This document shows, in pieces, positions 4,643-61,175 of a stretch of 64,000 nucleotides of DNA (position 1 is the stretch's first letter; every line of letters begins with the position of its first letter). The stretch spans positions 930,001-994,000 of the forward strand of contig NW_021832231.1 of NCBI RefSeq assembly GCF_006345805.1, written 5' to 3'. The notes under the pieces were generated by a model. That model was not told the origin of the DNA. It saw only the letters and a list, made by a program, of their open reading frames with translations, and made no database searches. Source of the DNA: Octopus sinensis (lineage: Eukaryota). The position numbers and the translations under genes are program-made.

Positions 4643-5227
4643 ATGGGATGCAGTTTATCTTCCGACATGTCCATACACCATATGAAACGAAACAAACCTG
4701 GTGACAATCCAAGGGCACATAAGAATTTTAACGAAAAGCATATCAAAGTTTTAACGTCTGCATAATTTTAGATTGTTCATAAAACATGGTCTCATCTTTC
4801 CAAAGATCTACTAAAACTTGGGACAAAAATTTTCTTGAGAATATTTGAATTGCGACCAGAATTTAAACAACTTTTTCCGTTCAAAACGGATTGTGAGCTA
4901 ATCTCCGATGACGAGTTCATTACTCATGCTTCTCGGTTTATGCAAGCTGTCAACGCGGCAGTTGTCAACATCAACGACCTCGACGCTACTCTGAGACCAC
5001 TTTTGTTTGGACTTGGAAGAAGACACGTCGATTTTAGGGGATTTAAACCATCATATTGGGATGTCTTTATTGAGGCCTTTCAGTATGTCTGGCGACAAGA
5101 ACTGAAGGAAAATTACACCGATGTTACAAAGGAGGCGTGGAATGCAATTCTTTGTTACATGACTGACACGATGAAAGAAGGTTATCAATCAGAATTAAAT
5201 GATCGAAAAAAGCGTACAGTTGCATAA
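4643..5227 (+). CDS. globin with N-terminal MGC acylation motif (globin X-like), 2 exons, ~186 aa
   Basis: ATG 4643; exon 1 4643-4747; 24-nt GT-AG intron 4748-4771 containing an in-frame TAA; exon 2 4772-5227. Trp A12 (KTW), Phe CD1 (QLFPF), distal His (THASRFM), proximal His (GRRHV). Confidence 0.9.
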
Positions 5228-6799: not shown

Positions 6800-9779
6800 G
6801 TTTCAAATTTTTTACAGTATCGTTTGTTATATTTCGAGAAAAGCAATTCGAACAAGAACTTGATTTAATGTCAATTTGAATTAAGTGGTTGGGCTAGTAA
6901 TTCTCATCCACCTGGCCATCTTCAGCATTAAGTATGATATCTTTAACAGTATATTCTTCTTGAAACAGTGCAATGATTTCATCGTCATCAATGACTTTTT
7001 CTGTTTGAAGCATATCTTCTTCAATCATAATGTTGTCTAGCTCATTATTATGTGCCTCAATACTTGGATCTGTGGACAACTCTTCTTCACCATAAAACTC
7101 ATCAAGACCTTGAATAATTCCAACTTTTTTAAACAATTTAGTTTTTTTCACACTTGCCCAAGCTTCGTGAAATAACAAATTACAGTACGACCCCGGTTTG
7201 GGGCAGCATTTTTATCATAGTGCCCCAAAAAGCGGGGGTGCCCCAAAATGCGAGGGTAAAGATTTTTGCTTTTATTTTCTCCTCAATAGATTTTTATTGC
7301 ATTTTAGACTAAAATTAAAATTATTTAATATTAATAAAAATTCTAACATAGTCCTTTCTTAATAAAATTTAAAAATTTTAATAAATCCAACAAAAAATAC
7401 TATTAAAAGTAATCAGTAATTTTCTCACCGAATTGGTTTTTTTTCAGTTCTCCTGATAGGTTTTTTCTAAATTCGTAGTAGATTTTCAAAAATTGTGGAC
7501 ATGTACTGAAAATATTATCTTCTAGAGAATTCACGATGTTTATGATTTCTTTAATTGATGATTTTTTAGATTCATATCCATCATAAGTAATTTTGTCCTC
7601 AATAATCTGTCGAATCCATTGAAATAACATCTGAAATCACGTCATCTATTAATTCTTCGTCCAACTGTACATTATCCGAAATTTTAATCTGTTTTCATTT
7701 ATTTTCTGCCAGCAATTAATTATCGTTGTCTCTGACATCATTTTCCATGCCTCCCCGACAACTGTAATGACTTGTCTAAGATTGACATTATTCAAATTCA
7801 AATCAGAAAGCTGTTCTTTTTCAAATATAAGAGTAAAATCAATCAGTTTATTGAAATAGAGGGACTTGAAGGATTTTATTATTCCATATCTAGGGGTTGA
7901 ATTAAAGCGGTCGTATTTTTGGGAAGAAAAAGTAAATAAACATTGGAATATTCTGTATTTCTGTGACAGCTCGCATTATCCAGTATTAAGACAATTTTCT
8001 CTTTTCATTGATCATATCTTGATTTACTTTCCATAACCATTTCCCAAAAATATCACTAGTCATCCACGAATTTTTTGATGCAGCATATAGTACTCCGTGA
8101 TCCTCAGCGTTAAAATTTTTTAAACACCTAGGAGATTTGAATTTTCCAATTAATAGAGGTTTTAACTTTTCACCAAGTGCATTACAACAAAGGAGAAGGG
8201 TAACTTTCTCTTTGCTCATTTTAATTCCATTGCATTTGTCATTAAATTGAACAAAAGATTTCGACGGCGTTCGCTTTATGTATAAAGCTGTTTCATCACA
8301 GTTAAAAATATTTTCACTTCCTACAGTTTCCAAACAGTTGTCATAATCAGCAAAAAAATTGGAAACCGTAGAAAGGTCAGATGAATTCTTTTCTCCACTT
8401 ATAGTTTTAAATAGCAACTCGTGTCTTTTCTTGAACCGGTCTAGCCATCCATTTGATGCCTTAAATGATTCATAATTTATCTTTTTAGATAATTTTTTTG
8501 CAATCAGTTTTAAGATAGTTCCAGAAATTGGAAGAAATTCATCTCTCAGACGTAGAAAAGTTTCAAAAACTAATCTATCTAATTCATTATTTGGATCATG
8601 TGATTCCTTGATTCTATCGGATTCAGTTAATCCCGCGTCAAAATAATAAACAAAATTTGTTTAATGCGAGAAATAGTACCTGTAATTAATAATTAGTTAA
8701 AAAAGATACCTTTGCTCGTTTTATACTTTTTAGCAAGATCTCTTTCTGAAAATTGACCATGTTTTATATCTTTAGCGATTTTAATTTTTGTTTCATAATT
8801 AATCTTTGAATTCTTTTTACGAACCATACTAAAGTCAAAATAAACACGTGAAATAATAGTATTAATTAATAATTAATAAATAAACTAACATTTTGTAATT
8901 AAATAAATTAAATAAGTGCCCCAAACCGGGGTCATCAAAAATAAATAATAGAATGAAAAATTACTGTTTTCAAAAACTGCCCCTAAAAGCGGGGGTGCCC
9001 CAAAACCCGAGGGTGCCCCACCCATGGGGTCTGCCCCAAACCGGGGTCGTACTGTATTGCGTGACTATGATTAAAAAAAGTCTAATGATTGACGAAGCGA
9101 GTTCATATAATTAACCACTACTTTTTCTGTAATAATGTTTTAGATTTTTTATTATTCCTGCATTATGATGATCAGTTGAGTTCTTTGAAAGCTTTATAAC
9201 TTCAATGTTTGGAAAATTGTTCTTCAAAATGTGACTTGGCGCGTTATAAAGAAGTAAATGAAATTTTTTGTTATATTGCTTCGGTTCATCATCAAGTAGC
9301 AGCATCATGTAACTGGTCATCCAAGCTTTCGAATTTGCATAATAATGACAGTATTTTCCAACATTGAATCCTTTGAAACACCTTGGTTTCTTGCTGTGTC
9401 CAATTATTAAAATATTAAAACCAAGGAATTAAAAGTTAGATTAATTTTGCTGTGTCCAATAACAAAAGGTGTCATTTTAATCGATCCAGTTGCATTAAAA
9501 CATAAAGCAACAGTTATTCAAACTTTAGATTGTTTTACGCCTTTTCTTTGGCTAATAAAATCGTTCTTGTAGGAAATTCTTGAAAAAGTCATGTTTCATC
9601 CATATTTAGTATAACTTCTGGGTCAATTTATCCGAAATTAAATTACTCCTAGCGTTCGGATTGCGGATTATTGAATTTTCGGAACATTGAATCAAATTTG
9701 GCAGAAAAAAGTTGGAAAATTTTTAATTTCAATTAAAAAAATTCGGATTATCGAAGTTCTGATTAACGAGGGTTGACTG
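6800..9779 (-). mobile_element. old pogo/Tigger-like element, host of a nested pogo
   Basis: Terminus (ta)cagtcaaccctcgttaatcag on minus ending 9779; DDE remnants LLLYNAPSH and NAGIIKNLKHYYRK (9111-9320); reading continues LFHEAWASV across the nested insertion. Left end not resolved. Confidence 0.7.
7183..9054 (-). mobile_element. pogo/Tigger-like transposon with a 30-nt intron in the transposase gene
   Basis: 24-bp TIRs cagtacgaccccggtttggggcag, TA TSD both sides, subterminal gtgcccc repeats; HTH, KASNGWLDRFK, NCDETAL, ILDNASCH, QPLDMGIIKSFK; intron 8680-8709. Confidence 0.92.
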
Positions 9780-26012: not shown

Positions 26013-26315
26013 TTAGTGTTGGTCACCGTATCCAAGCATGTTCTCAATCCCAACAGTGAGCATAGTAAGACCAACGGCTACTGGAAAGCCTTTAAAGATG
26101 GATCGGAACAGATATTGATAACGGGGGACATAATTCGGTCTAGCAAATCTCCAAACTTCGTTTCTAGTAAAATGATTGTATAACACATGCCTTATCCAGG
26201 GATCCTTCAAGCCCTTTGCTTTTAACATTTTTTGAAGTTTTTCTAATTCTTTAATTCCTTCAACCTTTTGAGTACGCCAGTCTGGGATTATATAAGGTGG
26301 ACCACTTCCGCCCAT
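26013..26315 (-). CDS. NDUFB3: complex I subunit B12
   Basis: PDWRTQKVEG...KGLKDPWIR|NEVWRF plus C-terminal TM helix; inferred 27-nt GC-AG intron 26164-26190. Confidence 0.9.
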   Translation of the reverse strand: MGGSGPPYIIPDWRTQKVEGIKELEKLQKMLKAKGLKDPWIRHVLYNHFTRNEVWRFARPNYVPRYQYLFRSIFKGFPVAVGLTMLTVGIENMLGYGDQH

Positions 26316-38489: not shown

Positions 38490-41120
38490 CTACCTCTGCA
38501 GGTACGTCCCAGTGACAATTGAGTTGGATTTATAACCACTTATAGCTTTTTCGACAGTTTCACCGACCATGGAGGATTTACTTTCAAGCCACAGGGGGAT
38601 TGGATCTTCAACTTTTTGGTGGTAAGCAAGCTTCAAAGCGAGCCTGCGAGACTTTTCAAATTTAGTTAAGATGGTGTCCTTCTTTTTAGAGAAGTACCAT
38701 CCCTCTTTTCCGTATAGTAGTCCCGGTAGGATCACCGTATTGAAAACGTAGAGGAAAGTATCAGGCTCCAAATTTAACTTCCTCAGGCAGAACAGAGCAT
38801 TAGTTGCTTTCCTTTTACTTAATTTTGCGTTTTCGAGATAGTTTCCCTTTTCATCGATGAACAAGCCAAGATATTTAATTGAGTTTTGTCGAGGTATGTT
38901 CTTGATCAGGCACGGTAAATTTATTAAATTTCTGCTTTCTGTGATTCTCAGTAATGCGGACTTCTCACGCGCAATAATGAACATATTTTCATCGCACCAT
39001 TGCTCCACTGTATTCATATATGATATAATCCTTTGTTCGGATAAGGCAGGTTTCGATGAAATGTCAAGGATTACAACATCATCGGCGTATATCAAAATTT
39101 CCGTCCGTGTGTTGACAGGAGACGGCAGATTGCTCATCACAATGTTGAATAATAGAGGACTGAGGACTGATCCTTGAGGGACGCCTCTTTTAAGTTTCAG
39201 TTCATCCGAGTCATAGTTCAGAAAGCTTATCACAGAGCGCCTGTCGCGGAGGAAGTCTTTTAGCCATAGGAATAGTCCTTTGTCTATGTGACACTTCGCC
39301 AGATGTCTAAGGAGACCGAGGTGCCAAACCATATCAAAGGCTTTTGAGATGTCTAGAGACACAATTGTCAGACACTCTTTGAAATCCAGAGCCTTTACAA
39401 TCGACGAATTGAGTGTATAAAGACAGTCAGCACAGGAACGACCCCTCCGAAAGCCCCACTGCACGTCTTTGAGATAACCATTTCTCTCGACGTGTTCAGA
39501 GAGTCGTTCAAACATTACCCTTTCCATTATTCGACTGATGGTAGGAATTAGGCTTATAGGCCTATAACTTGTCGCCAAATAACCAGGTTTTCCAGGCTTC
39601 CGTATCATCCTTACCTCCGTCAGTTTCCATGAAGAAGGGACGTATCCCAAGCTCACACTGCGGGAGAAGAGACATCCCAAATATTCGTAAAGTTGCTTGG
39701 GAGCTTCTTTGAACATGCGCATGGTTATCTTGTCCTTTCCCGGAGCGTTATTTTTGGAGTATCTAACTGCATTTTCCACGTCTTTGCACGTTATAGATTC
39801 CGAGCACATTGGTAATGAGCTAAGATTGTCTTCCAACTCTTTTTCCATATCAAACAAAGCTGAATCAGATAGATTTGTATCCGGATTGACTTCTTGTATT
39901 CTTTTGAGACTATCAGCAAATATGTTCGGGATTTCTTCATGAGATGCAGGGGATCCATCTTGTTTTAGCAGTTTAGGTATAGTTTTCTCAGACGTCGAGG
40001 TTAATTTCGAGTAGACCTTCCAAAAATTTGGACTTCCTTTATGTAGCTTTTTGCACTCAGTATTCCATTTTTTATCCTTCGCCACCTTCGCCGATTTTCT
40101 TATTTCTTCCGTAATGGTGAAGATTTCACTTTCCAAAACGGACCGGTCACGAAAATCTGCGCAGCGCCGGAGTTTGTTCCTTAGACATTGTTTTTTCCTT
40201 AGTAGGATTTCAACATTCATGTTTGGCATGTGAGTTTTCCTATTGTTTGAGACGATTTTTGTAGAATATGTTTCCAGATAAGACTTTATGTATCCAATAA
40301 GGGAATTGCTAGACTTCTCGAGGTCCTCAGATGAAGAATTTTCGTCAAGTTTAGGAGCGAAATTGCTCAGATAAAGTGTAAAACATTTTCGGTAGTGTTC
40401 CCAGTTTATAGTCGAGAGGTTATATCGTATAAAAGTTGGTTTACCCTTTAAAGGTCCAAGGTTGAGTTTGTATAAAATTGGTAGATGGTCACTTCCAATA
40501 TCATTTAAGGTGTACGGTTGTTCCATAAATTGAAGAGTAGACATAGAGACCAATGCTACGCCCAAATAGTCCCACCCTCCTGGTGAGTAATGATTTGGGG
40601 TTTTTGATGTGATGACCGAGAAACTGAGAGATTCTGAAAGCTTCTTAAGAATGATGCCATCCCTGTTGGTTCTCAGACAGCCAAAAGATGTGCATTTGGC
40701 ATTTAGATCCCCGAGGAGTATTGACAAATGATTGTGTTTATCGGCAAAAAAGTCCTTGATAAGCGATGAGTAATTGGAAAGGGATTTTGAGTACATCCCT
40801 CCGATTGTTACCCACCCTTTTTCCAGAAGGACGTCGATTGTGAGGAATTCACACAATTCCTCGGACACAATTTTTAGATTTTTCACCCTTAGAGTTGATT
40901 TGTAGTAGATAGAAGTGCCTGTTCCAGCGATCGAGCCCGGCTTCCACTTAATATCAAGGGAACGATAGCCATCCAAGTAGTAATCATCATGTTTTTTGAT
41001 TTTTGTTTCGTTTACGATCAAAAGGTCCACGGGGTTATGGGATAACATATCCTCAATCTCTGAACGCCTTCTCTTTAGAGAACGTGCGTTCACAGCGATA
41101 ATAGACAGAAAGGGGCTCAC
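38490..41120 (-). CDS. LINE ORF2: APE endonuclease plus reverse transcriptase, open for 876 aa
   Basis: VNARSL, NETK, LGDLNAK, SDHLPI; YRPISL, QWGFRRGRS, LDISKAFD, GVPQGSVLSPLLF, YADD, KYLG. Confidence 0.95.
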   Translation of the reverse strand: MSPFLSIIAVNARSLKRRRSEIEDMLSHNPVDLLIVNETKIKKHDDYYLDGYRSLDIKWKPGSIAGTGTSIYYKSTLRVKNLKIVSEELCEFLTIDVLLEKGWVTIGGMYSKSLSNYSSLIKDFFADKHNHLSILLGDLNAKCTSFGCLRTNRDGIILKKLSESLSFSVITSKTPNHYSPGGWDYLGVALVSMSTLQFMEQPYTLNDIGSDHLPILYKLNLGPLKGKPTFIRYNLSTINWEHYRKCFTLYLSNFAPKLDENSSSEDLEKSSNSLIGYIKSYLETYSTKIVSNNRKTHMPNMNVEILLRKKQCLRNKLRRCADFRDRSVLESEIFTITEEIRKSAKVAKDKKWNTECKKLHKGSPNFWKVYSKLTSTSEKTIPKLLKQDGSPASHEEIPNIFADSLKRIQEVNPDTNLSDSALFDMEKELEDNLSSLPMCSESITCKDVENAVRYSKNNAPGKDKITMRMFKEAPKQLYEYLGCLFSRSVSLGYVPSSWKLTEVRMIRKPGKPGYLATSYRPISLIPTISRIMERVMFERLSEHVERNGYLKDVQWGFRRGRSCADCLYTLNSSIVKALDFKECLTIVSLDISKAFDMVWHLGLLRHLAKCHIDKGLFLWLKDFLRDRRSVISFLNYDSDELKLKRGVPQGSVLSPLLFNIVMSNLPSPVNTRTEILIYADDVVILDISSKPALSEQRIISYMNTVEQWCDENMFIIAREKSALLRITESRNLINLPCLIKNIPRQNSIKYLGLFIDEKGNYLENAKLSKRKATNALFCLRKLNLEPDTFLYVFNTVILPGLLYGKEGWYFSKKKDTILTKFEKSRRLALKLAYHQKVEDPIPLWLESKSSMVGETVEKAISGYKSNSIVTGTYLQR

Positions 41121-42225
41121 GCCTGATCAATCCTTTCCCTTCCAAGAGAAAGGGACAACAGATTGTTGATATCGAGGCCTTTTTCATCGCATATAGCGAT
41201 TATTTTGCGAATCATAGAGGTAAGCTCAACGTCGATAGTTGGTGCTTTCCTCTTAAAGCGGGTTGGAGGCTCTGTGTGTTGTGTATTGGGAGGCAAAGTT
41301 GCGTCTTCACTAACATCTGTTTGCGTTGAGGAGTCAAAACAGCGGGAAATTGTGGGTTTTCGCCATACAGATTCAACGGCCTCCGCTTTTGACCATACAG
41401 TTTTTGAGTGTTCTGCTTTGGCCAGTCTGTCCCTGGCACTGAGCTGCTTTTTTAGTTGTTCAGTGGCTGCCTTAGCTGAAGAGCAGCCACCGTAGCAAGC
41501 CAAATGCCCACTCAGACCGCAGTTTATACATTTTTTCTCAGTTTTTCCTTTAATCGGGCACATTTTCATATTATGATCACCACCACAGAAAAGACATCTT
41601 TCCACTTCTTTGCAGAAGTTAGCAATGTGACCAAATTGTTGGCAGCGAAAGCATCTTGTTGCTGGGTTTTTAAACCATTCGCATCGTATTTTTTGAAATC
41701 CCACTTCGATTCCCATCCTTACAAGCGAAGTGGCTTCTGCCCTCGAATTCAGACTCAACTTTCCAACAGGTATACTCCGTCCATTTTTGTAGAACCGTTG
41801 AAAGTAAAACCGGGGTTGAGAATTTCTTTGAGGTAAAGATCCAGGTCTTCCTCGGAGACCCAAGATGGTATTCCCTTCAAGACTACGGTCGATGGTTGCA
41901 GACTGCACGCAGAAATATAATGGCCGTCCTGGCCAAATGGTTTGTTATACTCGAAGTCATTCACAAACGAGTCCCTATCACTAGAATTTGAGAATTCGAG
42001 GGTAAAGTCCCCAGACTTCCTGGCAGTAATTCGGGCCTTCTGTGCAGTCTCGGATTTGGTTAGAATATTAAAGGACTTTATTCGTCCAATCGCATAATTT
42101 TTTATCTGCAGCGAGAGGACAAGAGACTCAGTACAGTTTGGATTGTTCAAAGAGACTTGAGAGGAGTGTGACCCCTCCTCATCTTTGATACAGATTTCAT
42201 CTTTGCGTTCAAGCTCTTGAGACAA
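41117..42225 (-). CDS. LINE ORF1 (gag-like), one frameshift near 41815
   Basis: CFRCQQFGHIANFC, CLFCGGDHNMKMC, CINCGLSGHLAC; two overlapping ORFs switch frame at a C4 run. Confidence 0.85.
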
Positions 42226-45877: not shown

Positions 45878-48010
45878 CAGTCCGACCTCTAATTGGGGCG
45901 CACCTCCAGGGGTGGGGCACCTCTTTTTTGGGGAAAACTCTGTTTTGGGGCATTATAAATTTTTTTAACCAAATTATAAAAAATCAATTAATTTTAACAT
46001 CTCTATTTGGGGCATTGATTTTTTATTAAATAAAATTAATTATACCAATTTAAAAAATAATTATTTTTAGACACGTTTCATTTCAAATTTCTTGTGTAAT
46101 GCCTTTGAATTATTTATTTATTTACCCCCGGCCCCTTCAATTGAAGGAAGCCGGTGGCTAACAAGAACGTTAGGGCCAATGTCGGACGCTCCCAAAGATC
46201 CCCGATCGTGATCCGGTGTTCCGAGGAAGTAGAAGGCGGGCCTGGACAGGAGAAAAGGTCGTTGAGGGAATAGGAAGGGGTTATTTCACCAAGACCGATT
46301 TTTATGCGATAATCGTGTAGGCCAGTATGGTGGCCACAGCGGAGACGAGCCAAGTTCACTCGGGCTTCTCTTGAGAGGGAGGATTCGATCTTATTAATTG
46401 GCGGCGGAAGGCGTCCCAGAAGCTTGTTTATTCCAAGACATCTGATTGCCCTCGTAGCCACCAGGTCGTGAATCCCCTTCTGGTTAATGTCCGGAGGGGA
46501 TCGTATAAGCTTGCGGACTTTGTCCGCGAGGGTCGGAACTATTCTCCTGTTGTTAGTGGAGTGCCAGAGGAAGTAGCCAGGGTGATTTAGGGTTCGGCAT
46601 TTGTCAAGAAATTGCAGCCCGAGCATTTCAAAATGGTCACTGATTGGAAGGATTTTCGATTCCCAATGTAGGTGGTCGGTAGGTGTCAGGCGAAGTATTC
46701 GTGTGATATAAGTATTCGTGCCTTTGAATTATGAACCAAGTTGAAGATTGCTGATCATCTTTTAAAGAAAGAACATTCTGAGAGGAGATTATCCATAATG
46801 TACAATACTAGCAAGGGAACTATTTTTCGTATAAAAAAGAATATTCTTCCATTTATCAAAAAAGGATTTCTTTCCTCATCATTAAGTAAAAATAAAAACG
46901 GATTTGATGAAAAAGTCCTTGATATTTTTCAGCGTCTAAGCCTTAGACTCTAAGGGATCAAAATGTTCCAGTTTCTGGAACTCTTTTAAAAAAAATTTCC
47001 CTAACTGTTTCTTCGAGAATGGGCTTAAACAAGTTTAAAGCTTCAAATGGATGGTTAGAAAAATTCAAGCAGAGGCATGAATTAAAATTCCGAACATTGT
47101 CAGGCGAATCCGCATCTGCTGATCATGCGATAATTTTGAATTTTTTATCAGAATTAAATATCAAAGTTGAACAATATGGAAAGGAGAACATTTTTAATTG
47201 TGACGAAACTTCTCTTTTTATCAAACTTACCCCACGTAAATCATTCGTGAAAACTGGTGATTCGGCACGGGGCTTTAAAAGGAGTAAAGATAATGATTAT
47301 TCAAAAAAGAAAAATCTTAATGTTATTAGATAACGCTGCTTGCCACAAAATATCGACATTTAGCAACGTTGATTTTTTATTTTTAGCAAAAAATACGACA
47401 CCAATACTTCAACCATTGGATGCTGGAATCATTAAAAATTTCAAGGATAATTTGAATTTGAATTGTCTAATTGATTTTTTATGTTTTCAAGACGACCAGG
47501 ATTTGTTTATAGAGTTTTTATCCAAATTAAATTTGCGCCAAGTGGTAACAATAATCTCATATGCTTGGAATAATGTATCTGCGGATATTATTTATAACTG
47601 CTGGCAAAAGGTTTTTCGACAATCTCCATCAGACTCGAGTTGCATAAATGAATCATCTGAAGAAATATTTAATAATGTTATTGATGAATGTTTTGATGAA
47701 ATAGAAGATAATGATCCAAATATCTATGAGAATATAAGCTGCGAACCATCAATATCACAAATTTTAAGTTTGATGGAAAACTTAGAGACAAACATCTTTG
47801 ATTTGATTCCAGATTCTCTTCATGATTTTTATGAATTCAGAAAGAAAATGTCGTTAGGAATTAAAAATAAATATAAATATGGAGAAAAATTAACTGATTA
47901 TTTTAAAAAATAATGTTCTTTTTCTTTATTTATTGAGCTTTTTGAAAAACCTCTTTTTTGGGGAAACCTCTGATTTGAGGCACTTAGTGCCCCATTTAGA
48001 GGTCGGACTG
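45878..48010 (+). mobile_element. pogo/Tigger element (B), internally deleted
   Basis: TIRs cagtccgacctctaa(t/a)tgggg, TA TSD; FKASNGWLEKFK, NCDETSLF, LLDNAACH, QPLDAGIIKNFK; C-terminus similar to the 7183-9054 element. Confidence 0.9.
46100..46700 (-). mobile_element. LINE 3' fragment inserted in pogo B
   Basis: LARLRCGHH...LFSCP C-terminal motif; GC-rich against an AT-rich flank. Confidence 0.7.
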
Positions 48011-57310: not shown

Positions 57311-60300
57311 CACCCCTCGACATAAATATTGGTGAATCTTCAACTTACTTCATTCATACAAAGAATGATTTAATTTTTTCTTCAGATATATTTTAAAATC
57401 TGATAAAATTGATAAAAATTAATTTAATTATTTAAATTTTGAAATTTTGTCTAAGAAATTTAGAAAAAACAACGACTTTCATTGGCATAAAATTTGGTTA
57501 TTGTGAGATTAATATGTAGAACAGCGGTTCTCAACCGTGGTCCCCGGGGACCACTAGTGGTCCCCAGAAAATTTTTAGTGGTCCCCAGGAATTTTCAAAA
57601 AATAAAAATATATTAAAGTTAAAAAATTGTACAATTAAGTATAAATCAAAAAAAAAACATGAAATTAATCAAGCGGTTCTCAATCGTGGTCCCCAGAAAA
57701 TTTTTAGTGGTCCCCAGAAATTTTCGAAAATAACAATATATTAAATTTAAAACTAATTGTACAATTAAGTATAAATCAAAAACATTGAAATTAATCTGAT
57801 TTGATTAGCGTGGTTTATCATTCTAGTTATGGTTAACAAGAATCGTCGTCTTTGGTCGAATTCTTACGTACAATTTGGATTCACTAAATTCATTGCCCCA
57901 AATAATGAAATAAAGGCAAAATGCATGATTTGCCATAAAATTTTGGGAAACAATTCACTGAAACCTTCTCAACTTAGGCGCCACAAAGAGTCTGTACACC
58001 CAGAAAATTCTTCCTCACATGAATATTTTAAAGTCAAAAGAACGAAGTTTGATTTACAGCCAAAGCTTGAGTGGTTTAATAAATCTCAAGATAAACCGAG
58101 ATTAGAAGCATCATATGCTGTAATTTTAATTTATATCTAAAACAAATATGTCTCAATGATTATCGCAAAAAACAAAGCTGCACATAATTCTGGTGAAAAG
58201 TTAATCAAACCAGCGGCTTTTGAAATGGCTCGAATTTTGTTTGGTCCGGATGCAGTTACCAAACTTAAGGACATACCATTATCCAACGATTCAATTTCCC
58301 GTAGAATTTCAGAATTGTCATCCGATATCCTGAAGCAATTAATTGAAAGAATCAAAAAGTAAATGCAGAATAAGTATTCAATTGGACGAGTCAACTGACA
58401 TTTCTAACGTCTGTCAGCTTGTGTCCTATGTTCGCTTTGTTGATGATGAGAATATTATTGATGAGTTTTTATTTTGTTTGGAGATGGATGGACACACTCG
58501 TGGAGAGGACATCTTTAATATTTTTGACAATTTTATGAAGACGAATAAAATCCAATGGGATAAAGTTGGATCTATATGTCTGATGGTGCACCTGCGATGA
58601 TTGGTCATCAATCTGGACTTGTTACTCGTATTAAGGATTTGGTTCCTGATATTGTTACAAGACATTGTGCATTGCACAAATATGCACTTTGTTTAAAAAC
58701 TATGTGTTCGTCGTTAAGAGAAACACTAAACACTATTGTAAAAGTGATAAACTATATTCGATCTCGACCACTTAATCATCGAATTTTCCAAACTCTTTGT
58801 GAAGAGTTAGGAAGTAATCATTCTATACTACTTTATCATTCTGAAATTAGGTGGCTTTCAAGGGGGAAAATCCTTTCGAGAATTTGTGAACTTTCTCCTG
58901 CGATCTCTTTGTTTTTGCGTGATAATATGCAGCATGATTGGGCCGATCAATTCGATGATTTTACTTTTAAATCGAAAATGTATTATCTTGCCGATTTTTT
59001 TAACATTTTAAATGAGTTTAATTTGTCAATGCAGGGTAAAATTTTTATTAATTTATTTAAAGGTCTTTATATATCAATTGTCAAAGTCAATCAAATAATA
59101 ATGGCTTTTAAAAAAAAGTTATTATTGTGGATAATGAAAATAAAAAAAGGAATAACATCAATGTTCCCAATGCTTGAATATCATCTCGGACACAACCCAC
59201 CGGATAATGTTCTTCTAAGTCTGATAATCAAACATCTGGAAAATCTCAAGACAAAATTTGATGATTATTTTCCTGTTGAAGACCCAATTCCAAACTGGAT
59301 CGTTCAACCTTTCTTGACCTCATTTAAAGAATATCAGGAACTCAATTTTCAGCAGAGCTTGATTGAACTTCAATGTAATCAGTCTGCTCAGATTATTTTC
59401 AAATGTACTTCATTATTAGATTTTTGGTATTCTCATAAATAATTACTTTTTATTGTTAGGTGTCAGATGGCGAAAGAATTTCCCATTTTGAGTAAAACTG
59501 CATTGGAATCAATACTTGCATTCCCCACTACTTATCACTGTGAAATGGCGATGTCGTGTCTGACTTTTCTAAAAACAAAATATAGAAATAGACTACGGGT
59601 ACAAGATGATATGCGAGTAGCTTTGTCGAACATAGAGCCTGATATAAGTAAAATTATTCTGAGCAAACAAGATCAGAAATCTCACTAAATTACTATTAAA
59701 TTTTCTGTTATTTTCATAATGTTCATGTTATTTTTATAATAATATTCGAACATGTCTAAACCTGGCCCTGACGAGGCCAAAAATTGTGCGCTAATACCAA
59801 AAAATGTTTATTTTATTTAAGGTGGTCCCACAAAATTTTATAGTGCAAAAGTGGTCCCCAGTCTAAAAAAGGTTGAGAACCGCTGATGTAGAATAACCTC
59901 CTTTTGCCGAATAGATCTCCCAACACTTTTTTTTCATTGACTCAACTAATTTTTCAAGTGTTTTTGATGGAATAGAATTCCAAATATCTAATAGATTTTC
60001 CTTCAGTGCCTGAATGTTTTCATTTTTTCTTTGCCTAATTTGAACCTTCATATAAGCCCACAAATGCTCTATCGGATTTAAATCCGCAGATTGCGAAGGC
60101 CATTCTAATTTTTAAATATTTTTTTCGCGAAAATATTGAATAATTATTTTTGATGTATGGCAGGGAGCGTTGTCTTGTTGAAAAATATAGTCAACAATCC
60201 CCATTTTTTGTACAGAAAATGGCAAATTATTGGTCAAAATAGATTGATATTTTGCAGAATTAAGCGTTTTGTCTATAAATACCAAATCGCCTACCCCATG

Positions 60301-61175
60301 ATAGGAAAAACAACCCCACACCATGACTTTCCCTAATTTTTTATTACATCATAATTTACCTTTTCCAAATTTGACAGTTGGAGTAATATTTTCGAATTTA
60401 TTCATTTCAAATTTTTTTCTATACACAATTTTTCTTTTTTGGATCGGTAATAATTCAAAAATACATTCATCAGAAAAGATTATTGATCTAAAATCATGGT
60501 CTGAAATTTGAAGAAATTTTTGGAATCTGGAAACCATGTGTTTTTTTGTTAGAAGTGGTTTTTTCTTTGCAATTCTTCCGAAAATTCCATTTTTATTTAA
60601 ATTTCGTATTATGGTTCGAGACGAGACACGTGTTCCAGAAAACTTTTCTATTTCATTAGAGAGTTCAGAAGCAGTTAAAGATGAATTTTCCTCTGATGTG
60701 CGTACCAAATGATTAATTTGCACATTATTCAAAATTGATAGTCTTCCAGAACCATGTTGGCGGTCATATGATCCAGTTTTATTGTATTTCTTGATAAAAT
60801 TTACGACTGTTGAATATGGAACACCGGTTTCTTTAGAAATTTTAATATATGACATATTTAAGTCGTATAGCGCAATTATTTTCCCTTTCATAAACGAATC
60901 GAGAGTATTATATCTAAAAATATTTTTTTATTAAGATCAATCTCTAAATAGCATAATTTGACGGTTTACATTTTATAACCAATTTTTATGTCACTAACCT
61001 AATTGCCGACATGCTTTAAATTTCTTGAAATATTAAAATTTAAATCTATTTTAATTATAAATACAAAATAAATATTATTTTAGAAGATCTAAAGGATCTT
61101 AAAGTATGAATTTATTCGTTTTTAAATGAAAAAAAGCAGGAAAGATTAAATAACCAAATTTTTTGTCGAGGGGTG
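57311..61175 (-). mobile_element. Tc1 (DD34E) transposon with a 27-nt intron, interrupted at its last codons by a hAT
   Basis: TIRs cacccctcgaca(t/a)aaa(t/a)ttgg, TA TSD; IFSDE, KFGKG|KVMVWGCF, FQQDNAPCH, WPSQSADLNPIEHLW with 34-residue D-E spacing; one TAA at 60112-60114; ending STY* resumes left of 57522. Confidence 0.93.
57522..59885 (+). mobile_element. Buster-type hAT transposon with three microintrons
   Basis: TIRs cagcggttctcaacc / ggttgagaaccgctg; perfect TSD ATGTAGAA; BED finger, IQLDESTD, DGAPAM, RWLSRG, FPTTYHCE, KYRNRL; 5' end tandemly duplicated (~57522-57790). Confidence 0.95.

What the first reader, a model, noticed from the sequence alone, without database searches (positions are those of the whole stretch)
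57829..59688. Recently inserted hAT transposon whose transposase has three host-sized microintrons
Seen: 58120-58149 (30 nt, GT...AT, in-frame TAA; removal gives ASYA|VSMIIAK); a 27-nt GT-AG intron near 59036-59062 (removal gives MQG|LYISIVKVNQIIMAFKKKL, the usual spacing); and 59427-59459 (33 nt GT-AG; removal gives DFW|CQMAKEFP). TIRs and the 8-bp TSD are perfect, so an intron-bearing element transposed recently. Buster-type transposases are normally single-exon. With the Tc1 and pogo cases, three DNA-transposon families carry introns in the host 21-33 nt range. Inference: long co-evolution with the host spliceosome, with possible splicing control of transposase (as for P elements) or a route for microintron spread. 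The first acceptor is non-canonical, so it may be a mutated AG.
Basis: partly seen in the sequence, partly recalled or inferred. Interest (0 to 1): 0.8.

Follow-up and report, generated by a model that had tools for sequence, protein, structure and literature searches.

The report
Parasite hAT transposon with three microintrons
This is a broken copy of a young Buster-type hAT "cut-and-paste" transposon whose transposase gene carries three 27-33-base introns, and it sits in DNA that most likely comes from a dicyemid kidney parasite that was co-assembled with the Octopus vulgaris genome.

Summary
The element spans 57522-59885, with perfect 15-bp inverted ends and a perfect 8-bp duplication (ATGTAGAA). 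The transposase frame is interrupted by segments of 30, 27 and 33 nt.

- **Introns are a family feature.** Every copy that covers them carries all three segments. They lie in gaps of matching length in 35-37 of 37 related transposases. In the family consensus they are GT...AG. They are far more AT-rich than the exons, and they hold the only stop codons of an otherwise intact 590-codon consensus frame. The two closest outside relatives are single uninterrupted ORFs.
- **The host is not the octopus.** The assembly's COX1 is 100% Octopus vulgaris. However, host genes in this window and on sister contigs have 23-33-nt introns. Among animals this is known only in dicyemids and myxobolids, so the contig is most likely dicyemid DNA.
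The window copy has two private frameshift deletions and cannot encode transposase. The GT...AT acceptor is shared by five independent insertions, so it is not a read error.

No RNA evidence was available. Splicing control and intron spread remain untested. The genome search closed mid-session.

The parts
57514..57521 (.). Left copy of the 8-bp target site duplication, ATGTAGAA
   Evidence: Identical to 59886-59893. TA at positions 4-5 fits the Buster consensus nnnTAnnn.
57522..57536 (+). Left terminal inverted repeat, CAGCGGTTCTCAACC
   Evidence: Perfect reverse complement of 59871-59885. The same ends are found on every other copy.
57537..57828 (+). 5' non-coding region. It holds repeated GTGGTCCCC(A/G)G motifs and a tandem duplication of about 129 bp that includes a second, TIR-like sequence at 57671-57685.
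   Evidence: the repeat finder families D1-D7. The consensus matches itself at 1-126 versus 128-253 in all full-length copies. That these are transposase binding sites is inferred.
57829..58119 (+). Exon 1 (codons 1-97), N-terminal BED-type zinc finger region
   Evidence: Open frame from the ATG. Weak zf-BED Pfam hit, E = 0.002, below the cut-off. Aligns with homologues.
58120..58149 (+). Intron 1: 30 nt, phase 0, in-frame TAA. In this copy GT..AT; in the family consensus GT..AG.
   Evidence: All 37 homologues have a 10-residue gap here. AG is found in 9 copies and AT in 5 independent loci. GC is 13%.
58150..59035 (+). Exon 2 (catalytic core). In this copy it is broken by a 2-bp deletion at 58354/58355 and a 1-bp deletion at 58579/58580.
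   Evidence: Both deletions are private to the window copy among 10 aligned copies. Frame 0 runs into TAA at 58360-58362. The DESTD and CTDGAPAM motifs are invariant in homologues.
59036..59062 (+). Intron 2: 27 nt, GT..AG, phase 1, no in-frame stop
   Evidence: 35 of 37 homologues have a 9-residue gap here. Present in all 14 copies that cover it. GC is 7%.
59063..59426 (+). Exon 3
   Evidence: Open frame that aligns with homologues.
59427..59459 (+). Intron 3: 33 nt, GT..AG, phase 2, in-frame TAA
   Evidence: All 37 homologues are gapped over the 11 residues. Present in all 19 copies that cover it. GC is 18%.
59460..59688 (+). Exon 4: hAT C-terminal dimerisation region with the catalytic Glu (..YHCEMA..). 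Stop codon TAA at 59686-59688.
   Evidence: Dimer_Tnp_hAT hit, E = 0.0012, just under the cut-off. The Glu column is invariant in 37 homologues.
59689..59870 (+). 3' non-coding region with two further GTGGTCCC motifs
   Evidence: the repeat finder D1/D2 members at 59822 and 59846.
59871..59885 (-). Right terminal inverted repeat, GGTTGAGAACCGCTG
59886..59893 (.). Right copy of the target site duplication, ATGTAGAA
59894..60930 (-). Tc1-like element into which the hAT inserted, two codons before the Tc1 stop. The Tc1 continues at 57514 and leftwards. It has its own 27-nt GT..AG intron at 60333-60359.
   Evidence: Translation across the joined flanks. Intron DNA. Pfam HTH_Tnp_Tc3_2 and DDE_3 hits.

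Best explanation
The region is one defective copy of a young, recently mobile family of Buster-type hAT DNA transposons. The family lives in the genome of a microintron animal, most likely a dicyemid mesozoan from the octopus kidney, whose DNA was assembled together with Octopus vulgaris. The family's transposase gene has four exons separated by three spliceosomal GT-AG microintrons of 30, 27 and 33 nt, in phases 0, 1 and 2. The host spliceosome must remove at least introns 1 and 3, because both carry in-frame stops, to give a 590-aa BED-finger/DDE/hAT-dimerisation transposase. That enzyme would bind the 15-bp TIRs and the subterminal GTGGTCCCC repeats, excise the element, and reinsert it at nnnTAnnn sites, making 8-bp duplications. 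The introns were most likely gained after the lineage split from intronless Buster relatives, at or down to the size that the host spliceosome handles. The window copy itself cannot make transposase: it has a G-to-T change in the intron 1 acceptor plus two frameshift deletions. It was either mobilised in trans or decayed after insertion. Shown here: the anatomy, the family-wide presence of the segments, their absence from homologues, the intact consensus frame, the target-site preference, and microintrons in neighbouring host genes. Inferred: actual splicing, intron gain as opposed to inheritance, and dicyemid identity.
For: **Family and mobility.**
- At least 70 BLAST pieces at 94-100% identity, all on unplaced contigs.
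- 21 distinct loci were analysed, many of them internal-deletion derivatives.
- 14 of 15 insertions have perfect 8-bp TSDs, all with TA at positions 4-5. This is the Buster consensus (PMC3517528).
- The best homologues are FAM200C-, ZBED5- and SCAND3-like proteins, E = 5e-166, 45% identity. ZBED5 is Buster1 (PMC3606216).
- The D, D, E and W columns are invariant.

**Introns.**
- The majority consensus of 9 copies has one frame whose only stops lie inside segments 1 and 3. Removing the three segments gives 590 aa.
- Homologues have gaps of exactly 10, 9 and 11 residues.
- GT is kept in 46 of 47 copy-intron instances and AG in 42 of 47.
- Intron GC is 7-18% against 34% in the exons.
- The nearest relatives P0001 and P0002 are uninterrupted ORFs of 1761 and 1812 nt.

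**Host.**
- COX1 of the assembly is 100% Octopus vulgaris.
- The window's globin gene nevertheless has a 24-nt GT-AG intron.
- Alpha-tubulin genes on contigs that also carry hAT copies have 33-, 30- and 27-nt introns, while chromosomal tubulin matches are split without internal stops.
- A Pax gene has 27-, 23- and 29-nt introns.
- Among animals, introns under 30 nt are known only in Dicyemida and myxobolid Myxozoa (PMC13644364). The Dicyema median is 27 nt (PMC6543705), and one study reports 26.2 +/- 1.9 nt (PMC2222250).
Against: - No transcript evidence of any kind was available, and no genomic copy has precisely lost an intron.
- Selection on the coding sequence is barely detectable. Singleton changes are 21 synonymous to 76 non-synonymous, which is the neutral expectation. 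Shared changes are 7 to 10, against 20% synonymous expected.
- Only one of six full-length copies keeps an open frame after conceptual splicing, and that copy has the GT..AT acceptor.
- Intron 2 has no stop and could be translated as a 9-residue insert.
- The dicyemid assignment is indirect. The Pax paired domain is 63% identical to Dicyema Pax6, no more than to other animals. It shares five rare states with Dicyema Pax6, two of them exclusive, but vertebrate Pax4 proteins score similarly. The tree grouping (90/94) joins two long branches.
- The Pfam hits of the spliced protein are below the cut-offs, and there is no PDB sequence match.
Confidence: 0.75

Rival explanations
1. The three segments are not spliced. 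They are short insertions fixed in a dead master copy, and the whole family is a non-autonomous pseudogene family moved by some other transposase.
For: There is no RNA evidence. Most copies are broken. Singleton substitutions are neutral. The GT..AT subfamily still spread to five loci, which shows that copies can move without coding for anything.
Against: Outside the segments, the consensus keeps a 590-codon frame with full-length homology and intact catalytic residues. All stops lie in segments that start with GT and end with AG, with a chance probability of about 1e-6 or less. The segments match the size and composition of host introns seen in the same window.
Confidence: 0.07
2. The contig is true octopus DNA, and the elements, together with their microintrons, arrived by horizontal transfer from a dicyemid or another microintron organism.
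For: The assembly's mitochondrion is Octopus vulgaris. Parasite-to-host transposon transfer is well documented in general (own knowledge). The coverage of the contig could not be examined.
Against: Ordinary cellular genes in the same window (globin, NDUFB3-like) and on other hAT-bearing contigs (alpha-tubulin on C8698, C10215 and C8845) carry 24-33-nt introns, while tubulin matches on the chromosome-sized contigs are split without internal stops, as expected for long introns. None of the 70 scored hAT pieces lies on contigs C1-C30.
Confidence: 0.05
3. The introns are ancestral to this Buster lineage. They would have been longer introns inherited from an intron-bearing donor that then shrank with the rest of the host's introns, and were not gained inside the dicyemid lineage.
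For: Dicyemid introns are described as shortened versions at conserved positions (PMC2222250). Other hAT families do carry introns, for example the five-exon BuT2 (PMC3942097). The nearest sampled relatives are only 45% identical, so a long unsampled stem exists.
Against: 37, 35 and 37 of 37 homologues have no residues at the three sites. The two closest are verified single ORFs. Most other hits come from contigs of 2-3 kb that encode about 600 aa, so they cannot hold sizeable introns.
Confidence: 0.2
4. Splicing is used to regulate transposition, for example by tissue- or stage-specific retention of an intron as in the P element. Stop-free intron 2 or the stop-bearing introns 1 and 3 would yield truncated repressor forms.
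For: This rests only on analogy. Retention of intron 1 would give a 103-aa BED-finger-only protein, and retention of intron 2 an in-frame 9-aa insert.
Against: Nothing in the sequence distinguishes these introns from ordinary host introns, and no expression data exist.
Confidence: 0.1

Closest known systems
Buster family of hAT transposons (TcBuster, AeBuster1, and the domesticated ZBED5/Buster1, SCAND3/ZBED9 and FAM200 genes)
   Same: It has an 8-bp TSD with the nnnTAnnn preference, short TIRs, and an N-terminal BED finger. The DDE core has the inserted alpha-helical domain, and a C-terminal hAT dimerisation region follows. The best database hits are FAM200C-, ZBED5- and SCAND3-like proteins.
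   Different: It is only 45% identical to the nearest relative. The gene is split by three 27-33-nt introns, whereas the closest relatives are single ORFs. The host is a microintron parasite.
Intron-bearing hAT elements: BuT2 (five exons, PMC3942097); Ac of maize and Tol2 of medaka (own knowledge)
   Same: The transposase must be made from a spliced mRNA. Internal-deletion derivatives are mobilised in trans.
   Different: These belong to the Tip and Ac families, not Buster. Their introns are of ordinary length (tens to hundreds of nt), and their positions are unrelated.
Dicyemid spliceosomal microintrons (PMC2222250, PMC6543705, PMC6736024, PMC13644364)
   Same: Length of 23-33 nt, GT...AG with little else conserved, AT-rich, with A-runs a few bases upstream of the AG. 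The TE introns fall in the same range as host introns measured here.
   Different: The published dicyemid introns sit at ancestral positions in cellular genes. These three sit at positions where no homologue has residues, inside a mobile element.
P element (splicing-regulated transposase)
   Same: A DNA transposon whose transposase needs removal of three introns.
   Different: It belongs to a different superfamily. Regulated retention of its third intron is demonstrated experimentally, and nothing comparable is shown here.

Membership tests
hAT superfamily | 8-bp target site duplication | tested here: met
   The window copy and 13 other independent insertions have perfect 8-bp TSDs. One has a single mismatch.
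hAT superfamily | Short terminal inverted repeats (5-27 bp) | tested here: met
   15-bp perfect TIRs at 57522-57536 and 59871-59885.
hAT superfamily | Transposase with a DDE triad, the conserved W, and a C-terminal hAT dimerisation domain | tested here: met
   Met for the family consensus. D (QLDESTD), D (CTDGAPAM), W (RWLSRG) and E (HCEMA) lie in columns that are invariant in 36-37 of 37 homologues. Dimer_Tnp_hAT scores E = 0.0012, just below the cut-off, and homologues carry PF05699. In the window copy the first D lies in the frameshifted stretch.
Buster family of hAT | Target-site consensus nnnTAnnn (the Ac family has nTnnnnAn) | tested here: met
   All 14 perfect TSDs have TA at positions 4-5. 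The consensus is taken from PMC3517528, which cites Arensburger 2011.
Buster family of hAT | Transposase groups with Buster sequences and not with Ac or Tip | tested here: inconclusive
   The top 120 hits are FAM200-, ZBED5- and SCAND3-like proteins with the Pfam families FAM200-ZBED5_RNase-like and DUF4371. No tree including Ac and Tip outgroups was built.
Spliceosomal (U2-type GT-AG) intron | GT at the 5' end and AG at the 3' end | tested here: met
   Met for all three in the consensus. In the window copy, intron 1 ends in AT (58148-58149).
Spliceosomal (U2-type GT-AG) intron | Removal restores the frame and colinearity with intronless homologues | tested here: met
Spliceosomal (U2-type GT-AG) intron | Absent from the mature mRNA | not testable with these tools
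   No transcript data. No near-identical protein, spliced or unspliced, exists in the 5.8-billion-protein collection.
Spliceosomal (U2-type GT-AG) intron | Length within what the host spliceosome handles | tested here: met
   Host introns measured here are 24, 33, 30, 27, 27, 23 and 29 nt.
Autonomous transposon copy | Uninterrupted transposase coding capacity in this copy | tested here: not met
   The acceptor is mutated, and there is a 2-bp and a 1-bp deletion. The first stop comes at codon 168 after conceptual splicing.
Dicyemida (origin of the contig) | Cellular genes with introns under about 30 nt in a metazoan genome | tested here: met
   Globin in the window, and alpha-tubulin and a Pax gene on sister contigs. 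This is restricted to Dicyemida and Myxobolidae among animals (PMC13644364).
Dicyemida (origin of the contig) | Sequence affinity to known dicyemid genes | tested here: inconclusive
   The best named hit of the Pax gene is Dicyema acuticephalum Pax6, but by only 1 bit. The tree groups them at 90/94 with long branches. Paired-domain identity is no higher than to other phyla. Five rare states are shared.
Dicyemida (origin of the contig) | Dicyemid 18S rRNA or single-gene mitochondrial minicircles in the same contig set | not tested
The weak COX1 hits on small contigs were low-complexity artefacts.

The most novel reading that the evidence does not exclude
Three unrelated DNA-transposon lineages in this genome (hAT-Buster, Tc1 and pogo), whose outside relatives are intronless, each carry GT-AG introns of exactly host size at sites where homologues have no residues. 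This would mean that dicyemids create new microintrons de novo, at about 27-33 nt, and do not only shrink ancestral introns. Dated transposon families would then give a clock for intron birth in an animal with near-minimal introns.
Probability: 0.35. Interest if true: 0.65.

Novelty: new member of a known kind. Interest (0 to 1): 0.45.

Why it matters
Two points are worth keeping.

- **Intron origin.** Transposases that arrive without introns give a clean zero baseline for intron gain. The same logic has been used for domesticated genes in mammals (PMC3369469). Five microintrons in three transposon families within 64 kb would therefore be rare direct evidence about how and at what size new introns arise in a lineage with near-minimal introns.
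- **Hidden parasite genome.** The window shows that a published-scale Octopus vulgaris assembly contains megabase contigs of a second animal. The contigs that carry this family alone add up to several Mb. This matters for anyone annotating octopus genes or repeats. It also offers genome data for a dicyemid of O. vulgaris.

The element itself is an ordinary hAT family, and the window copy is dead.

Tried and rejected
- **Dicyemid mitochondrial COX1 among weak Pfam hits on small contigs:** the hits were microsatellite or low-complexity translations.
- **Empty site:** I searched all held sequences for an empty site in the flanking Tc1 and found none. For the same reason there was no search for divergent hAT relatives, rRNA, or protein-level hits on the chromosomes.
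- **Copies that have precisely lost an intron (these would prove splicing):** none were found. All internal gaps are ordinary deletion derivatives with breakpoints away from the introns.
- **Alternative acceptor for the GT..AT copies:** the next AG, at 58176-58177, would give a 58-nt intron and a frameshift. Rejected by reading.
- **Purifying selection among copies:** too few informative sites.
- **PDB sequence search with the spliced protein:** no hit at 1e-3.
- **My frame-only dynamic-programming microintron finder:** it mis-spliced alpha-tubulin, so the tubulin introns were set by hand against the conserved protein.
- **The apparent intron near 46930 in the second pogo-like copy:** it is a 14-nt insertion or frameshift, not an intron.
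- **Ciliate or alternative-code readings:** considered at the start and dropped. TAA ends the ORFs, and the genes are metazoan.
Full report
**What is in the sequence.** An ATG at 57829 opens a frame that ends at TAA 59686-59688. The frame is interrupted by 58120-58149 (30 nt, GT..AT, in-frame TAA), 59036-59062 (27 nt, GT..AG, no stop) and 59427-59459 (33 nt, GT..AG, in-frame TAA). The element runs from 57522 to 59885 (2364 bp). It has perfect 15-bp terminal inverted repeats (CAGCGGTTCTCAACC) and a perfect 8-bp duplication, ATGTAGAA, at 57514-57521 and 59886-59893. The 5' non-coding part holds repeated GTGGTCCCC motifs and a tandem duplication of about 129 bp that includes a second TIR-like sequence. 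The element sits two codons before the stop of a Tc1-like transposase gene on the minus strand.

Between the first and second segments the frame is broken twice. A 2-bp deletion (AT, between 58354 and 58355) and a 1-bp deletion (A, between 58579 and 58580) throw about 75 codons out of frame, including the first catalytic Asp. A stop follows at 58360-58362. Both deletions are private to the window copy among ten aligned copies. Neither lies in a long homopolymer, so they are probably real, but raw reads were not available.

**The family.**
- A DNA search of the assembly gave at least 70 pieces at 94-100% identity. I analysed 21 distinct loci.
- Six are full length. Most of the rest are internal-deletion derivatives with both ends, the usual decay products of cut-and-paste elements.
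- Fourteen of fifteen insertions with both ends have perfect 8-bp duplications, and all fourteen have TA at positions 4-5. This is the nnnTAnnn preference that separates Buster from Ac elements (PMC3517528).
- A majority consensus of nine copies has a single frame whose only stops lie inside segments 1 and 3. Removing the three segments gives a 590-aa protein.
- Its best relatives are FAM200C-, ZBED5- and SCAND3-like proteins, E = 5e-166, 45% identity. ZBED5 is Buster1 (PMC3606216).
- The D, D, E and W positions fall in columns that are invariant in 36-37 of 37 homologues.
- Pfam hits of the spliced protein (zf-BED, Dimer_Tnp_hAT) are just under the cut-offs. A PDB sequence search found nothing.

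**Are the three segments introns?**
- Every copy that covers them has them: 14, 14 and 19 copies respectively.
- In an alignment with 37 homologues the segments face gaps of exactly 10 residues (37 of 37), 9 residues (35 of 37) and 11 residues (37 of 37).
- In the consensus all three are GT...AG. The chance of that for three inserts is about 1e-8, or 1e-6 allowing five registers each.
- Their GC content is 7-18% against 34% in the exons.
- Their phases are 0, 1 and 2, and all three lengths are multiples of three. Two carry in-frame stops, so a working transposase needs them removed. Intron 2 has no stop and would add nine residues if retained.
- The two closest outside relatives are verified uninterrupted ORFs: a shrimp chromosome locus of 1761 nt and a marine metagenome contig of 1812 nt.
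- No transcript data could be reached, and no genomic copy has lost an intron precisely. Splicing is therefore strongly inferred but not shown.

**The odd acceptor.** Nine copies have AG at the end of intron 1. Five independent loci, each with its own flanks and TSD, have AT, the window copy among them. It is thus a real, inherited G-to-T change that defines a subfamily, not a read error. No usable alternative AG exists: the next one would give a 58-nt intron and a frameshift. This subfamily was therefore most likely moved in trans. Of six full-length copies, only one keeps an open frame after conceptual splicing, and it belongs to the AT subfamily. An intact AG-type source copy was not among the loci retrieved.

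**Selection.** Singleton differences are spread evenly over codon positions, introns and non-coding ends. They are 21 synonymous to 76 non-synonymous, the neutral expectation of about 20% synonymous. Variants shared by two or more copies are 7 synonymous to 10 non-synonymous, a weak excess. The family is too young for more. The argument for function rests on the intact consensus frame.

**Who is the host?**
- The assembly is 2.72 Gb in 13,516 contigs, and its mitochondrial COX1 is 100% Octopus vulgaris. Octopus genes have long introns: tubulin matches on the chromosome-sized contigs are split without internal stops.
- The window itself contains a globin gene (4643-5227, N-terminal MGC, Pfam Globin E = 3e-18) with a 24-nt GT-AG intron at 4748-4771.
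- It also contains an NDUFB3/B12-like gene (about 26013-26315, minus strand) with a possible 27-nt GC-AG segment.
- Alpha-tubulin genes on C10215 and C8698 have introns of 33, 30 and 27 nt. Both contigs also carry copies of this hAT, as does C8845, whose tubulin match contains internal stops.
- A Pax gene on C12762 has introns of 27, 23 and 29 nt at the conserved paired-domain and homeodomain positions.
- None of the 70 hAT pieces is on contigs C1-C30.
- Among animals, introns under 30 nt are reported only from Dicyemida and myxobolid Myxozoa (PMC13644364). The Dicyema median is 27 nt (PMC6543705), one study reports 26.2 +/- 1.9 nt (PMC2222250), and the D. japonicum genome has 36.7% GC and 49% repeats (PMC6736024). 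Dicyemids live in octopus renal sacs.
- The contig is therefore most likely dicyemid DNA co-assembled with the host.
- Direct sequence affinity is only suggestive. Dicyema acuticephalum Pax6 is the best named hit, by one bit. It groups with the query at 90/94 on long branches. It shares five rare paired-domain states, two of them exclusive. Overall identity (63%) is no higher than to other phyla.

**The wider claim of three transposon families.** This was checked and holds. The flanking Tc1 has a 27-nt GT-AG intron at 60333-60359 (minus strand), whose removal restores KFGKGKVMVWG. A pogo element (about 7405-8826, minus strand) has a 30-nt GT-AG intron at 8680-8709 in its N-terminal helix-turn-helix. 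A second pogo-like copy at 46.6-47.9 kb reads ..TSKGTIFRIKK.. straight through the same codon, so intron presence differs between related pogo lineages in one genome.

**Mechanism, with the level of support for each step.**
- Shown: Buster-type ends, target choice and protein homology; recent mobility; introns as a family trait absent from relatives; a dead window copy.
- Inferred: the host spliceosome removes the three microintrons to give the transposase. The introns were gained after the split from intronless relatives; the rival is inheritance followed by shrinkage, because the stem to the nearest relative is long. Broken and AT-type copies are moved in trans.
- Not supported by any evidence: splicing as a regulatory switch, or the element as a vehicle that spreads microintrons.

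**Comparison and novelty.** Intron-bearing hAT transposases are well known: BuT2 with five exons (PMC3942097), and Ac and Tol2 from my own knowledge. Dicyemid microintrons are also well known. New here are a Buster family only 45% identical to anything in the collection, three microintrons where the nearest relatives have none, and the setting. I rate it a new member of a known kind with moderate interest. The more novel reading is that transposon-borne microintrons document de novo intron birth at minimal size in dicyemids. It is not excluded, and I put it at about one in three.

**Limits.** Four analyses could therefore not be run: the empty-site search, the search for divergent relatives and their intron positions, the rRNA-based identification, and a protein-level check of the chromosomes. 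I made a consensus of this DNA transposon only for frame and alignment analysis, and I give no list of repairs.

Noticed in passing
whole window (G000:C8702:930001-994000) and contigs C8698, C10215, C8845, C12762, C1794, C9497 and others: An assembly whose mitochondrion is Octopus vulgaris contains megabase-scale unplaced contigs of a second animal with 23-33-nt introns, most likely a dicyemid renal parasite. Contigs carrying this hAT family alone sum to several Mb.
   Followed up: partly
window 4643-5227 (+), intron 4748-4771: A globin gene with an N-terminal MGCSLSS motif, as in membrane-anchored globin X (probable myristoylation/palmitoylation site), split by a 24-nt GT-AG intron. Pfam Globin E = 3e-18.
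   Followed up: partly
window about 26013-26315 (-), segment 26164-26190: An NDUFB3/B12-family gene in which a 27-nt segment, absent from the usual DPW.RNE.WR motif, starts with GC and ends with AG. It is either a GC-AG microintron or a translated 9-residue insert.
   Followed up: no
window 60333-60359 (-), within the Tc1-like element at 59894 to about 60930 and left of 57514: The Tc1-like transposase has a 27-nt GT-AG microintron with an in-frame stop. It also has a separate in-frame TAA (NI*KLEWP). The hAT inserted two codons before its stop codon.
   Followed up: partly
window 8680-8709 (-), pogo element about 7405-8826: The pogo/CENP-B-like transposase has a 30-nt GT-AG microintron in its N-terminal helix-turn-helix. 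This copy also has a 1-nt frameshift in an A-run just downstream, and CCCCGGTTTGGGGCA repeats lie upstream (8930-9060).
   Followed up: partly
window about 46600-47913 (+): A second, internally deleted pogo-like copy lacks an intron at the codon where the first pogo has one (..TSKGTIFRIKK.. is contiguous). It carries a 14-nt frameshifting insertion near 46930.
   Followed up: partly
window 38490-41944 (-): A LINE-type retrotransposon with an 878-aa open ORF2 (endonuclease and reverse transcriptase motifs) and an upstream CCHC zinc-knuckle ORF1. It matches the report of many LINE ORF2 copies in Dicyema japonicum (PMC6736024).
   Followed up: no
L038 (C8698:121200-124700) versus L039 (C10215:88000-91500): There are two alpha-tubulin loci with the same three microintrons. 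The C8698 copy has a frameshift in the middle of the gene (pseudogene or assembly error). The coding region has 53% GC against 24-35% in the flanks.
   Followed up: no
L011-L014 and L023-L026 (contigs C13365, C10313, C2376, C444); L005 = L006 (C9733, C8615): The same hAT insertion, with identical flanks, appears on two to four different contigs. The parasite part of the assembly is therefore redundant (haplotigs or uncollapsed duplicates).
   Followed up: no
L005/L006 flank (L006 4313-4654): A fragment of a second, distant hAT transposase (30% identity over residues 147-260) lies about 0.5 kb from a copy of this family.
   Followed up: no
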